Position numbers and translations under genes: made by a program. The notes under the pieces are model-generated. The model was not told the origin of the DNA. It searched no databases and was given only the letters and a program-made list of their open reading frames with translations. DNA of 64,000 bases. Source: Piromyces finnis finn. Its lineage: Eukaryota > Fungi > Neocallimastigomycota. The DNA is taken from the NCBI GenBank assembly GCA_002104945.1, contig MCFH01000013.1, positions 434,001 to 498,000 on the forward strand. Reading direction: 5' to 3'. Position 1 is the stretch's first letter, and every line of letters starts with the position of its first letter. Below are positions 55,857-62,478 of this stretch, in pieces.

Positions 55857-58800
55857 TTAATAGTATCTCTTATTAAGTTTTTTTCTCATTTTCTTAATTT
55901 TATGTTCCATTCGTCCACGATCATGATAACGTTTTTCATACTCCCATTGATACCAATATTTCTTAACAAGAGAGTCTCTTGACAATTTTTTATATCCTTT
56001 ACTATAATAAAAATCTTCAGATGAAGTTTTGATTTTTCTTGTGGCACCCCATGAAAAATTATCAAAATGCCAAAAAGCATAGATAGGTAATAAGAAATTC
56101 CATATTGGATAGGCCAACATATATATAAGCATCCAAAATAGATTTGATAATTTTTGGGAGGTACAAAAAATAAGAATAATCTGGAAAAAGATAAAAATAA
56201 AAGCAATACTTAGAGTTAAATAAACATAACCCGTTTGAATTCCTGCCACAAATAAGTATATTAAAAGTATAAAGAATGCTGGTAAAACCACTGTACTTAA
56301 TAATTCCAATAAAATAACAAACTAATTTAAATTATATATACATATATATTTGTTAATAAAATAGACATACAAATTACATAATTAAATTTTTGAAAAAAAA
56401 AAAAAAGAATAAATATCTCAATTATAAATATATATATGTATATATATTATCGTGAAATGATAATAAAATAAAATAAATATACCTGCATACTACAACAGAA
56501 AATACCACAAAGTTGAGGAACCATAACCAATTCTAATAAATTATGAATAGTAGAATTAATCCATCTTCTTCTTTGAGATAATAATACATGAAATTTATTA
56601 GGTACTTGAGTTTTACAAACAGCATCGGATATCCATACCTTTATTCAATTTTTTATATTATATTAAATTTAATATAAAAATAAATATTTTTACAAAAAAA
56701 ATTAATAATTCAATATAATTAATATAAATATAAAAATCTATCTAAAAATAATATTTATATATATTATATAATTGTTTTTTTTTTTTTTTTTTTTTGTTGG
56801 ATAACCTACAGTTTTTCTTCTTGGGAAATTCTTAAGCATGAGAGTAGTTAAATATCTATCTTCTCCTAATAAAAATAGGTTTTTTCGATGAAGGGAATTG
56901 ACATTATTGGAAGCATCTTTTTTTTTTTTTTTGCATATATATTGTAATAAATATTAATAACGATTATATTTTAAAAAAAAAAAAATTTTAAATTTTAAAA
57001 AAAAAAATTACATTCATTAATAATAGCAGGACTGGTTAATAAGGGAACGAAATATTTATCATCTTCATATTTCGGTGATCGTACACGATACATACTAAAA
57101 CAACCAGGTAAGCAGGTAACCCCACCAAATACACTTTCAAATGCTTTCCCTAAATGATGAGTTATAAAATATTCATAAATCTGAATCATTGTAACCCAAG
57201 ATTGGAATCGATTAGAAATAGTGGTTTCACCACATAACCCCATAATTTTTGGATCATTATTCATGGCACGAACCATTTTTAATAAGGCTTCACTATGAAC
57301 TTCAGTATCGGCATCCACCATTAATACATAATTATATTGATCAGGATAAATATGTGTTAATTGATAAATTTTTTTAAATAAATCATACTCTAGAGCAGTC
57401 ATTTTATTATTTAATACGACCGCCGATAAAAATTTCATTAAAATTAATTGAGAATCTCGTTTTCCTCGATTTCCTGGTTTTTCATCATTTCGTTCTGACT
57501 CTTTACCACATTTAACAACTAGAATGACTGGTACACGTCGATAGCTATATTGATAATGACCAGCATAGACACAAGCCATATTGGTTTGCTTATCAATATC
57601 GCCAACGGACTCATAACAATAACTCATTGGACGAGAAGACCAACGTTCTACATCTAACATATTTAATATAATATCCGATGTTGTTTGAGAATTACCAGAT
57701 CCGGTAATAACACCATCAACAACAATAAATAATAATTTATTATTGTCCTTGAAAGAAGTTAGTGTTAATGAATTTAATGATTTTCGAATTTCTTCTTCTT
57801 GTTCAGAATAACATGTAATTAAACACATTACACAATCATCAGGTAATCCATGATGGTTATGTGCACTTGACATACTTTTAGCCATAAACCAATGGTAATA
57901 TAATGAAACTAAAAGTTTTACTGCTACAGTTCCAATTAAAATAACACTTACCCTTTTTTTTTAAATATTAGTTTTTTTTTTTTTTTTTGAATGCATATTT
58001 AATATAATAAAGAGATACATTAAATTATTTAATTACATAAAAAAAAAAAAGCTAATCCAATTTTTATGATATCATATATATATATATAAAAGTGAAATAA
58101 TTACTTACACTATCATAATAATATAAGAGATTAAACAACCTTCAGTTTGACCTTCCAATTTGCCAATCATAAACTATATAATTAATAATTAGAAAAATAA
58201 ATATTTCGAAAAATCTTTTATTTTTTTAACTATTTTCTAAAATAAAAAATAATAATAATGATCATTTTGATGATAATTTAAAATAAAATTATAATATGAA
58301 AATATACGTTACTTGAGAATCCATACAACTTATAAACTCTTTAGATTTTTTCATATTATGAGCAAAATAAGCAATATCATATCCTTTTCTTTCCAATAAA
58401 TATTTAGTTTCATATTCACCTAAATAATGTTCACTTTGATGAAAATAAGATGTCATATTATATATTTTATTTCTTAAAATAATAATATGATTTTCATTTT
58501 GTTGATTTAATTTTTTTACATCATCATACGAATATGAAATATAATTGGAAGTTTTCATAATTTTTAAATAGTGACGGGTATTATTTGACGTATGACAATA
58601 ATTAATTCCATTTATTGTTCCAAAATGAGAATCACACCATACACGATGATTAGGAAATTTTGGCCATCGACTACATTTTTTTGCTTTATCAGGGTTAGAA
58701 ATATCTGGGGGAATAAGATAGGAAAGATCTTTACCAAAATATGTTTTAATAATACTGTGATAATGATTTTTTTCTTCAGGTTCATTAGGTATATAACTAG

Positions 58801-61800: not shown

Positions 61801-62478
61801 TGTAAAGCAGTATCACCATTATTATCTTAATAATTAGTATAAAATATAAAATATATTGAATAATATTAAAGAATATTATTATATTATTATTATTATTATA
61901 TTTTGGAGAGATTATTTAAATATAATATTTTGGTATTTTTTTTTAAAATTAATATTTAAAAAAAAAAAAGAAAAAGTATTTTGCATATTAATTATAAAAA
62001 ATCAGTTGAATATTTTTATGTTAAAAACTTCTTTTTGTACAATAGTTTAATAATTAAAACTGAAATTAATAATAATAAATAATAAAAAATAATTAATACC
62101 TTTTACATCTAAATTAATATGTTCTTGCTGGCAAAAGTATTCTATTAGTTTGTAATTTTCTCTTGATATACTTAACATTAAACAAGTTCTTCCCCCACAT
62201 AATGAATGTTCTGTTTCATTTAATAATCCATATTTTTCTACATAATATTGTACTTTATCAAAATGACTATTGATAGTTGCATTTTGAAATTTCTTTAAAA
62301 TACTTTTAAAACTTTTATTTCTTTTAACATAAGATAAAGAATATTTTCCTATCGATGAATAATAATTCTCATTACTATCTTTTTTATTTTCATAACCTTG
62401 TTGCTCGAATGGAAACAGCGGTAATGATGATTGTTGTTGTTGAATTGGTCTATTATCATATTCATTTCGACTTAACAT
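55857..62478 (-). CDS. Class IV (Chs3-like) chitin synthase with an N-terminal ankyrin-repeat module; 11 exons, ~1,675 aa. Exons 62478-62100, 61825-61792, 61708-61639, 61487-61124, 60969-59486, 59275-58313, 58173-58109, 57952-57012, 56916-56810, 56638-56483, 56321-55857
   Basis: Catalytic motifs [62 protein letters not shown] and [10 protein letters not shown] are present, along with the LAWREK TM region and two cytochrome-b5-like segments ([22 protein letters not shown]). Ankyrin repeats include [39 protein letters not shown] and [13 protein letters not shown]. All ten introns are GT..AG and phase-consistent (5,028 nt). Chitin synthase identity is near certain; the fusion is somewhat less so. 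Confidence 0.85.
60452..60745 (-). repeat. Coding (AAT/AAC)n tract: 98 codons, 97 Asn and 1 Asp, in the chitin synthase N-terminal linker
   Basis: In frame within ORF 59426..60793. Confidence 0.85.

What the first reader, a model, noticed from the sequence alone, without database searches (positions are those of the whole stretch)
55857..62478. Ankyrin-repeat module fused in frame to a class IV chitin synthase
Seen: the ORF track splits this region into an ankyrin piece and a chitin synthase. However, ankyrin exon 61487-61124 ends at a GTAAGA donor (phase 1), and a phase-matching AG at 60971/60970 opens a stop-free frame for 58 codons before the Met at 60793. That frame continues through the Asn-rich linker into the TM/cytochrome-b5/catalytic core. 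Unspliced, the ankyrin ORF runs into intron-like (TA)n sequence. Known: fungal chitin synthases carry N-terminal myosin motors (classes V/VII), oomycete enzymes carry MIT domains, and class IV enzymes normally have only a disordered N-terminus. I do not know of an ankyrin-chitin synthase architecture, but I cannot confirm novelty. Inference: about five ankyrin repeats could act as a built-in adaptor for localisation, trafficking or activation, replacing partners such as Chs4/Skt5 or exomer.
Basis: partly seen in the sequence, partly recalled or inferred. Interest (0 to 1): 0.82.

Follow-up and report, generated by a model that had tools for sequence, protein, structure and literature searches.

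The report
Ankyrin repeats fused to chitin synthase
In the gut fungus Piromyces finnis and at least four related anaerobic fungi, one gene very probably joins a protein-gripping ankyrin-repeat module to a cell-wall chitin synthase, a combination hidden because public annotations cut the gene into pieces.

Summary
On the minus strand, 11 GT..AG exons (62478..55857) give one unique stop-free reading of 1675 aa. It comprises about 5 ankyrin repeats, an Asn-rich linker of about 500 aa, a first membrane helix, a weak Cyt-b5-like/CHS4 region, a second membrane helix and an intact Chitin_synth_2 catalytic core.

The window is Piromyces finnis. The public 'ankyrin' protein ORX53361.1 already uses the proposed 61124/60969 junction. 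It then ends in a doubtful 11-nt exon.

In five anaerobic gut fungi the ankyrin exon ends at the same phase-1 GT donor. An in-phase acceptor then opens 23-69 stop-free, ATG-free codons before the first Met of the synthase frame. Three public annotations (P. finnis, Anaeromyces robustus, Neocallimastix lanati) break the gene at three different places, and each neighbouring pair of parts is joined in at least one of them.

I put the fusion at about 0.85.

I found no described Ank-chitin synthase architecture in the searches available. I rate it a new variant of a known kind (accessory-domain chitin synthases), apparently lineage-specific. The adaptor function is inferred only. Class IV membership rests on domain content; no phylogeny was made.

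The parts
62100..62478 (-). Exon 1: start codon (ATG at 62478), a disordered N-terminus of about 65 aa and the first, degenerate ankyrin repeats. Donor AAAAG|GTATTA, phase 1.
   Evidence: Identical to residues 1-126 of ORX53361.1. AF2 confidence is low for residues 1-108.
61792..61825 (-). Exon 2 (34 nt): ...[11 protein letters not shown], the core of an ankyrin repeat.
61639..61708 (-). Exon 3 (70 nt): the rest of that ankyrin repeat.
61124..61487 (-). Exon 4: three ankyrin repeats, ending ...[10 protein letters not shown] + A | GTAAGA (phase-1 donor).
   Evidence: Pfam Ank_2 1.5e-10. 70-80% identical to orthologues P0001, P0002, P0003 and P0010. The donor has the same position and phase in six loci.
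60970..61123 (-). Intron 4 (154 nt), the junction in question: GTAAGA ... T-rich ... AAAG.
   Evidence: The same intron is used by the public model ORX53361.1.
59486..60969 (-). Exon 5: a low-complexity linker of 494 aa. It holds the 58 codons upstream of Met60793, a run of about 110 Asn, an Arg/Ser/Lys patch and conserved motifs (YYNN..IMN; [30 protein letters not shown]; [10 protein letters not shown]; DIT).
   Evidence: No Pfam family. Publicly annotated as a separate 455-aa single-exon protein that reads into intron 5.
58313..59275 (-). Exon 6: first membrane helix and a weak Cyt-b5-like / CHS4-like region. Unannotated in the public P. finnis record.
   Evidence: Pfam Cyt-b5 27.4 bits (cut-off 23.7) and CHS4 25.6 bits (cut-off 27). 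Relatives score similarly. No called gene covers it in L019.
58109..58173 (-). Exon 7 (65 nt): start of the second membrane helix. The donor GT|GTAAGT creates a read-through TAA.
   Evidence: Spliced to exons 6 and 8 in the metatranscriptome contig L033 of a relative.
57012..57952 (-). Exon 8: GT2 catalytic core (DAD, QIYEY).
   Evidence: Pfam Chitin_synth_2 3.2e-116. Motifs read in the translation.
56810..56916 (-). Exon 9: LGEDRYLTT motif.
56483..56638 (-). Exon 10: [10 protein letters not shown] (the QRRRW motif).
   Evidence: Pfam Chitin_synth_2 1.8e-24.
55857..56321 (-). Exon 11: C-terminal membrane helices, the SWG motif, a basic tail and the stop codon.
   Evidence: Pfam Chitin_synth_2 8.2e-29 with no DEK_C hit.

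Best explanation
The region is one gene of Piromyces finnis, with 11 coding exons on the minus strand (62478..55857) and a product of 1675 aa. It encodes a division-2, class IV-like chitin synthase. The cytosolic N-terminus of that enzyme has been extended by an ankyrin-repeat module: four well-formed repeats plus one or two degenerate ones, at residues about 66-268. The module is tethered to the enzyme through a disordered, Asn-rich linker of about 500 aa that carries a few conserved short motifs. The fusion is shared by Piromyces, Anaeromyces, Neocallimastix and at least two uncultured anaerobic gut fungi, so it is old within Neocallimastigomycota. How it works is inferred and not shown. The catalytic core is intact and should make chitin at the plasma membrane. 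The ankyrin module sits on the same (cytosolic) side and would act as a built-in protein-binding platform that recruits or holds the enzyme at particular sites, or gates its trafficking or activation. This would be the role played by the myosin motor in class V/VII enzymes, by the MIT domain in oomycete enzymes, and by separate partners (Chs4/Skt5-Bni4, exomer) for yeast Chs3.
For: Gene model: there is a unique stop-free GT..AG model.

Open frame: 69 stop-free codons without an ATG lie upstream of Met60793, with P about 3e-4.

Public P. finnis protein: ORX53361.1 is identical to the model for 304 residues, including 22 residues past the 61124/60969 junction. It then uses a 70-nt 'intron' and an 11-nt last exon.

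Five species: each has a phase-1 GT donor right after EELxFN..N, an in-phase acceptor, and 69, 67, 23, 55 or 42 ATG-free open codons before the first Met. The unspliced read-through tails are 3-52 codons long and are not conserved.

Acceptor conservation: the acceptor aligns between L001 and N. lanati, and is followed by in-frame 9-nt and 3-nt indels. A motif spanning the 'start' Met (YYNN.SSNIMN.M) is conserved on both sides of that Met.

N. lanati: the 3'-partial 'ankyrin' model runs 130 aa into the linker without a stop. The next model (1132 aa, Chitin_synth_2) starts at an internal ATG of the same open frame.

A. robustus: one 844-aa Ank model spans the ankyrin exons through exon 7 and stops at the TAA inside the intron-7 donor. 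A 519-aa Chitin_synth_2 model follows.

Break points: they differ in all three annotations.

Expression and synteny: exons 6-7-8 are spliced in a metatranscriptome contig. The Mgm1-Ank-CHS gene order is conserved.

Domains: Pfam and motif evidence are. AF2 gives confident helix pairs over residues 106-264.
Against: Protein and DNA searches found no transcript-derived ORF or contig spanning the ankyrin-linker junction, although the catalytic half of a relative does appear in a metatranscriptome. The gene models that support the junction may be ab initio predictions. A conserved in-frame Met (..IMN..) leaves room for an additional, unfused isoform. The linker between the acceptor and that Met is weakly conserved. 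Nothing tests the proposed adaptor function.
Confidence: 0.85

Rival explanations
1. There are two or three separate genes, as in the current public annotation: a small cytosolic ankyrin protein of about 300 aa, and an independent chitin synthase translated from Met60793 or from a later Met.
For: GenBank annotation of P. finnis lists a 307-aa ankyrin, a 455-aa protein and a 514-aa chitin synthase. An in-frame Met inside a conserved ..IMN.. motif exists in all species. No transcript contig joining the two halves was found.
Against: The ankyrin exon has no conserved stop. It ends at a conserved phase-1 donor, and the only downstream frame it can join is the synthase frame. Between 23 and 69 ATG-free open codons precede the Met in five species. 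The 455-aa model is simply the raw ORF reading into intron 5, and exon 6 is left unannotated. The annotations of three species split the locus at three different points and overlap one another. The proposed 11-nt terminal exon after a 70-nt intron is atypical for this gene, whose introns are 83-274 nt. Only about 280 nt would be left for a terminator, a promoter and a 5' UTR.
Confidence: 0.07
2. There is one locus with two products. The fused Ank-synthase mRNA would exist alongside an unfused synthase made from an internal promoter or alternative first exon in or near intron 4, translated from the conserved Met. Alternatively there could be an Ank-linker-only isoform made by intron retention.
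For: The Met at 60793 and its counterparts are conserved. Retention of intron 5 would end the frame after 19 codons. The public model proposes alternative splicing within exon 5. The metatranscriptome contig L033 shows an aberrant exon 8/9 join, so splice variants of this gene do occur.
Against: Conservation extends to residues upstream of the Met, so the Met is part of a coding motif and not merely a start context. There is no direct evidence for any internal start.
Confidence: 0.25
3. The apparent fusion is a chance alignment of frames, or an assembly artefact, between neighbouring genes in a very AT-rich genome.
For: Asn-rich (AAT)n sequence is naturally poor in stops in one frame. AT-rich genomes offer many GT and AG dinucleotides. 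One metagenome contig (L002) is indeed chimeric at an (ATA)n repeat.
Against: The window is identical to the GenBank scaffold over the whole gene. The same arrangement, donor phase and open frame recur in five independently assembled species. The other two frames of the 207-nt stretch carry 7 and 24 stops.
Confidence: 0.02

Closest known systems
Fungal division-2 class IV chitin synthases (S. cerevisiae Chs3, N. crassa CHS-4)
   Same: Both have a Chitin_synth_2 catalytic core with the QxxEY, EDR, QRRRW and SWG motifs. Both have a Cyt-b5-like/CHS4-like region before the core and a long cytosolic N-terminus. Neither has a myosin head or a DEK_C domain.
   Different: Class IV enzymes as described have no folded N-terminal accessory domain and depend on separate partners (Chs4/Skt5, Bni4, Chs7, exomer; from my own knowledge). 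Here about five ankyrin repeats and an Asn-rich linker of about 500 aa are part of the same polypeptide. Phylogenetic placement in class IV was not tested.
Class V/VII chitin synthases with an N-terminal myosin motor domain (CsmA/CsmB, Mcs1)
   Same: Both are division-2 synthases carrying a cytosolic N-terminal module thought to deliver or tether the enzyme. The domain sets are described in PMC13561034 and PMC8778642.
   Different: The module here is ankyrin repeats and not a motor. No DEK_C is present, and the connection is a long disordered linker.
Oomycete chitin synthases with an N-terminal MIT domain (Saprolegnia, Phytophthora Chs1; PDB 7wjm)
   Same: Both carry a small helical protein-interaction domain on the cytosolic N-terminus of a chitin synthase.
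   Different: The catalytic lineage is different: only a 90-residue local match at E = 2.8e-11 to 7wjm. The accessory fold is also different.
Other ankyrin fusions of anaerobic gut fungi
   Same: Ankyrin families are expanded in Neocallimastigomycota (PMC8778642). This scan has noted several other Ank fusions in the same genome (unchecked notes).
   Different: None of those involves a cell-wall polysaccharide synthase.

Membership tests
Chitin synthase, Chitin_synth_2 type (GT2; fungal divisions 2/3) | Match to Pfam PF03142 above the gathering score. | tested here: met
   389.5, 86.8 and 101.1 bits in exons 8, 10 and 11 against a cut-off of 27, covering profile positions 8-527.
Chitin synthase, Chitin_synth_2 type (GT2; fungal divisions 2/3) | Catalytic motifs QxxEY, (L)GEDR, Q(R/Q)xRW and the C-terminal SWG. 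| tested here: met
   [20 protein letters not shown] and FSWGATR were read in the spliced translation. The motif set follows PMC13561034.
Fungal class IV chitin synthase (division 2) | Additional Cyt-b5-like / CHS4 domain upstream of the catalytic domain. | tested here: inconclusive
   Cyt-b5 scores 27.4 bits (cut-off 23.7) and CHS4 scores 25.6 bits (cut-off 27) in exon 6. The five relatives scanned score 21.6-29 bits for Cyt-b5; the four of them with a CHS4 hit score 17.4-25.8 bits.
Fungal class IV chitin synthase (division 2) | No myosin motor domain and no DEK_C (these mark classes V and VII). | tested here: met
   Pfam scans found no PF00063 or PF08766 hit in exons 1, 4-6, 8, 10 and 11. 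Exons 2, 3, 7 and 9 (11-35 codons each) were not scanned for these.
Fungal class IV chitin synthase (division 2) | Groups with Chs3/CHS-4 in a catalytic-domain phylogeny. | not tested
   Class-labelled full-length references could not be fetched because of the length window of the word search. The best non-gut-fungus fragments are 45-56% identical and come from chytrids, Zoopagomycota and Dikarya.
Ankyrin-repeat domain | Pfam Ank family matches and a stack of helix-turn-helix repeats. | tested here: met
   Ank_2 scores 107.4 bits in 3 stretches, Ank 71.8 bits and Ank_4 67.6 bits on P0005. AF2 gives paired helices at 133-151, 166-190, 209-229 and 244-264 with pLDDT about 65-94, and weaker elements at 72-117.
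Single transcription unit (true fusion gene) | Conserved splice donor and acceptor joining the two halves in frame. | tested here: met
   Found in five species. The acceptor is aligned between two of them. The junction is used in the public P. finnis and N. lanati models.
Single transcription unit (true fusion gene) | RNA molecules that span the junction. | not testable with these tools
No transcript-derived ORF or contig was found.

The most novel reading that the evidence does not exclude
The ankyrin module is a Neocallimastigomycota-specific, built-in localisation and activation adaptor. It would bind a cytoskeletal, septin-like or vesicle-coat partner and so replace the separate Chs4/Skt5-Bni4 or exomer machinery used by yeast Chs3. 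On this reading it is a third independent solution, after myosin and MIT domains, to the problem of steering a chitin synthase.
Probability: 0.25. Interest if true: 0.65.

Novelty: new variant of a known kind. Interest (0 to 1): 0.52.

Why it matters
How a chitin synthase is placed and switched on depends largely on its N-terminal accessory domains (myosin motor, MIT) or on separate adaptors. An ankyrin platform fused to the enzyme would add a new type to that short list. It would also give a direct handle for finding the partners that position wall synthesis in anaerobic gut fungi, for example by pull-down with the ankyrin module. The cell biology of these fungi is almost unexplored, and their ankyrin families are strongly expanded without a known role. 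There is a practical point as well. This gene is cut into two or three models in each of the three annotated genomes examined, so surveys of chitin synthase domain architecture that rely on those proteomes cannot see the fusion.

Tried and rejected
- **Word search with exon 4 and with P0010.** These returned only genomic ORFs and the two public ankyrin models. No transcript-derived ORF was found.
- **Big HMMER search with exon 4.** The only orthologues listed were P0005, P0010 and P0003. The remaining hits are generic multi-repeat ankyrin proteins, and no long Ank-synthase protein was listed. The A. robustus 844-aa model did not appear there, which I cannot explain.
- **Spliced-junction pattern of the L001 species in metagenome contigs.** No hits.
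- **The search for related loci with the ankyrin alignment.** Only unrelated ankyrin genes at 25-36% identity.
- **Exact rebuilding of the A. robustus 844-aa model.** This failed. The homologous exons would give roughly 1065 aa by a rough estimate, so the annotators must have removed parts of the linker.
- **Ungapped identity around the donor.** Uninformative in DNA this AT-rich.
- **PDB sequence search.** No division-2 synthase has been solved.
- **Rfam.** Nothing in the window.
- **Contig L002.** Rejected as evidence because it is chimeric at an (ATA)n repeat.
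Full report
**What is in the sequence**

The region is extremely AT-rich: exons are 25-35% GC and introns about 10%. On the minus strand the raw ORF list shows two ankyrin-type ORFs, a 455-aa Asn-rich ORF and several chitin synthase pieces.

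Reading the strand and testing splice sites by script gave 11 coding exons, all with GT..AG introns of 83-274 nt:
- 62478-62100
- 61825-61792
- 61708-61639
- 61487-61124
- 60969-59486
- 59275-58313
- 58173-58109
- 57952-57012
- 56916-56810
- 56638-56483
- 56321-55857

Enumerating the GT/AG choices for the last three junctions left one stop-free solution, so the model gives 1675 aa.

Every coordinate in the finding is right. Exon 4 ends AATAATA|GTAAGA in phase 1. The AG lies at 60971/60970. From 60969, 58 codons run to the ATG at 60793.

**Domains**

- Exon 4 is Ank_2. The spliced N-terminus scores 107 bits for Ank_2.
- Exons 8, 10 and 11 cover Chitin_synth_2 from profile position 8 to 527, with E-values down to 3e-116.
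- The translation contains [20 protein letters not shown] and SWG, so the catalytic core looks intact.
- Exon 6 gives only borderline Cyt-b5 and CHS4 hits. The same is true in the five relatives scanned.
- No myosin head or DEK_C was found.
- An AlphaFold2 model of residues 1-300 has confident helix pairs from about 106 to 264. That is four good repeats, preceded by one or two weak ones and a disordered first 65 residues or so. 'About five repeats' is therefore fair.

**Is the junction more than chance?**

The synthase frame is open for 69 codons upstream of Met60793 and has no in-frame ATG. Sequences of intron composition or of the stretch's own composition stay open that long in about 3 in 10,000 trials. 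The other two frames of the stretch carry 7 and 24 stops. The longest open run in the gene's introns is 42 codons. Coding sequence without a start codon implies an upstream exon.

**Whose DNA it is, and what the public record says**

The exhaustive HMMER search with exon 4 returned ORX53361.1, 'ankyrin [Piromyces finnis]', 307 aa. Its scaffold, MCFH01000013.1, is identical to the window over the whole gene.

That public protein equals my model for 304 residues, which means it uses the 61124/60969 junction and continues for 22 residues beyond it. It then removes a 70-nt 'intron' and ends in an 11-nt exon (TIV*) 30 nt before Met60793.

The next public model is the bare 455-aa ORF, which reads into intron 5. 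Exons 6 and 7 are not annotated. The third model is a 514-aa Chitin_synth_2 protein.

**Relatives**

The word search found ORFs 74-80% identical to exon 4 on metagenome contigs of three further anaerobic gut fungi. N. lanati came from the HMMER search with exon 4 and its genome context. A. robustus came from the word search with the catalytic exon and its context.

In P. finnis, A. robustus, N. lanati and two uncultured species:
- The ankyrin exon ends at a GT donor with one extra base, directly after EELxFN..N.
- The unspliced read-through tails are 3-52 codons long and unrelated to each other.
- An in-phase AG acceptor lies 140-292 nt downstream.
- 69, 67, 23, 55 and 42 ATG-free open codons precede the first Met of the long frame.

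A sixth locus, L007, shows the same donor but is cut by a repeat. The acceptor of the L001 species aligns with the annotated N. lanati acceptor, and the exon after it differs by 9-nt and 3-nt indels, as expected of coding sequence. The supposed start Met lies inside a motif (YYNN.SSNIMN.M) that is conserved on both of its sides.

**Annotations overlap**

In N. lanati the 'ankyrin ... partial' protein KAG4107022.1 is spliced at the equivalent junction. It then runs 130 residues into the linker with no stop. The following 1132-aa Chitin_synth_2 model begins at an internal ATG of the same 445-codon open frame, 169 nt further on, across an Asn/Thr repeat.

In A. robustus a single 844-aa Ank model spans from the ankyrin start to exon 7. 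It stops at the TAA formed by the intron-7 donor, and a 519-aa Chitin_synth_2 model follows.

The three annotations therefore cut the locus at three different places:
- The ankyrin-to-linker join is made in all three.
- The linker-to-membrane/Cyt-b5-like join is made in two.
- The join from that region to the catalytic domain is made in N. lanati, and also in a metatranscriptome contig of a relative in which exons 6-7-8 and 9-10 are spliced.

The neighbouring Mgm1-type dynamin gene is syntenic in all four long loci.

**What is missing**

There is no direct RNA evidence for the ankyrin-linker junction. I sent nothing from that place to any search tool afterwards. Searches for transcript-derived ORFs or contigs across the junction were blank. 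The supporting gene models may be ab initio predictions. An additional unfused isoform from the conserved Met cannot be excluded.

**Comparison with what is known**

By domain content the enzyme is a division-2, class IV-like synthase. The division definitions are as in PMC13561034. I made no phylogeny.

Known accessory domains are the myosin head, DEK_C and Cyt-b5 in fungi and MIT in oomycetes (listed among the hits).

Six full-text searches found no paper describing an ankyrin-chitin synthase architecture. The closest is a statement that ankyrin families are expanded in anaerobic fungi with unknown roles (PMC8778642).

No protein in the searches carried both Ank and Chitin_synth_2. However, the word search cannot see full-length proteins, and I could not query InterPro architectures. 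Novelty outside this lineage therefore remains open.

**Verdict**

The fusion is real with about 0.85 confidence. It is conserved across Neocallimastigomycota and hidden by fragmented annotation.

The mechanism is inference. I propose a cytosolic ankyrin platform on a long flexible tether that recruits a partner for placement, trafficking or activation of the synthase.

I rate it a new variant of a known kind and moderately interesting. The frequency of ankyrin fusions in this genome (unchecked notes) tempers the surprise.

Noticed in passing
window 58109-59275 (minus strand): Exons 6 and 7 encode the membrane helices and the Cyt-b5-like/CHS4-like region. No gene model covers them in the public P. 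finnis annotation. The 455-aa public protein next to them is a raw ORF that reads 19 codons into intron 5.
   Followed up: yes
L033:1-1296 (JGI sample 3300037677): This metatranscriptome contig comes from a relative that is 84% identical. Exons 6-7-8 and 9-10 are spliced in it. Its exon 8/9 join skips the first ~12 codons of exon 9 (model residues 1434-1438 unmatched; ~37-39 nt by eye) and shifts the frame into a stop. It is either an aberrant splice variant or an assembly artefact.
   Followed up: partly
window 60400-60760: A run of about 110 Asn codons, (AAT/AAC)n, in the linker is specific to P. finnis. The same exon has 366-467 open codons in relatives against 524 here. Assemblies and gene models of several species break at such repeats.
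   Followed up: partly
window 59486-60300 (linker, minus strand): There are conserved islands in an otherwise divergent linker: [40 protein letters not shown] and DIT, plus an Arg/Ser/Lys-rich patch ([18 protein letters not shown]). They are possible short linear motifs or phosphorylation sites, and their function is unknown.
   Followed up: no
L002:3500-6439: Downstream of exon 6 this metagenome contig switches, across a long (ATA)n repeat, to an unrelated minus-strand Peptidase_M36 gene. It is probably an assembly chimera.
   Followed up: partly
L019, L020, L032, L001 (upstream of the ankyrin exons): An Mgm1/OPA1-type dynamin gene (Dynamin_N, Dynamin_M, LIS_MGM1) lies directly upstream of the Ank-synthase gene in P. 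finnis, N. lanati, A. robustus and an uncultured relative. The gene order is conserved.
   Followed up: partly
result list: The A. robustus 844-aa Ank model should match exon 4 at about 75% identity, yet it was not among the 150 best representatives of the exhaustive search. Its 50% cluster is presumably represented by another sequence.
   Followed up: no
The tool says this filter also trips by chance. No reads were laid, and the stretch was kept out of all later searches.
   Followed up: no
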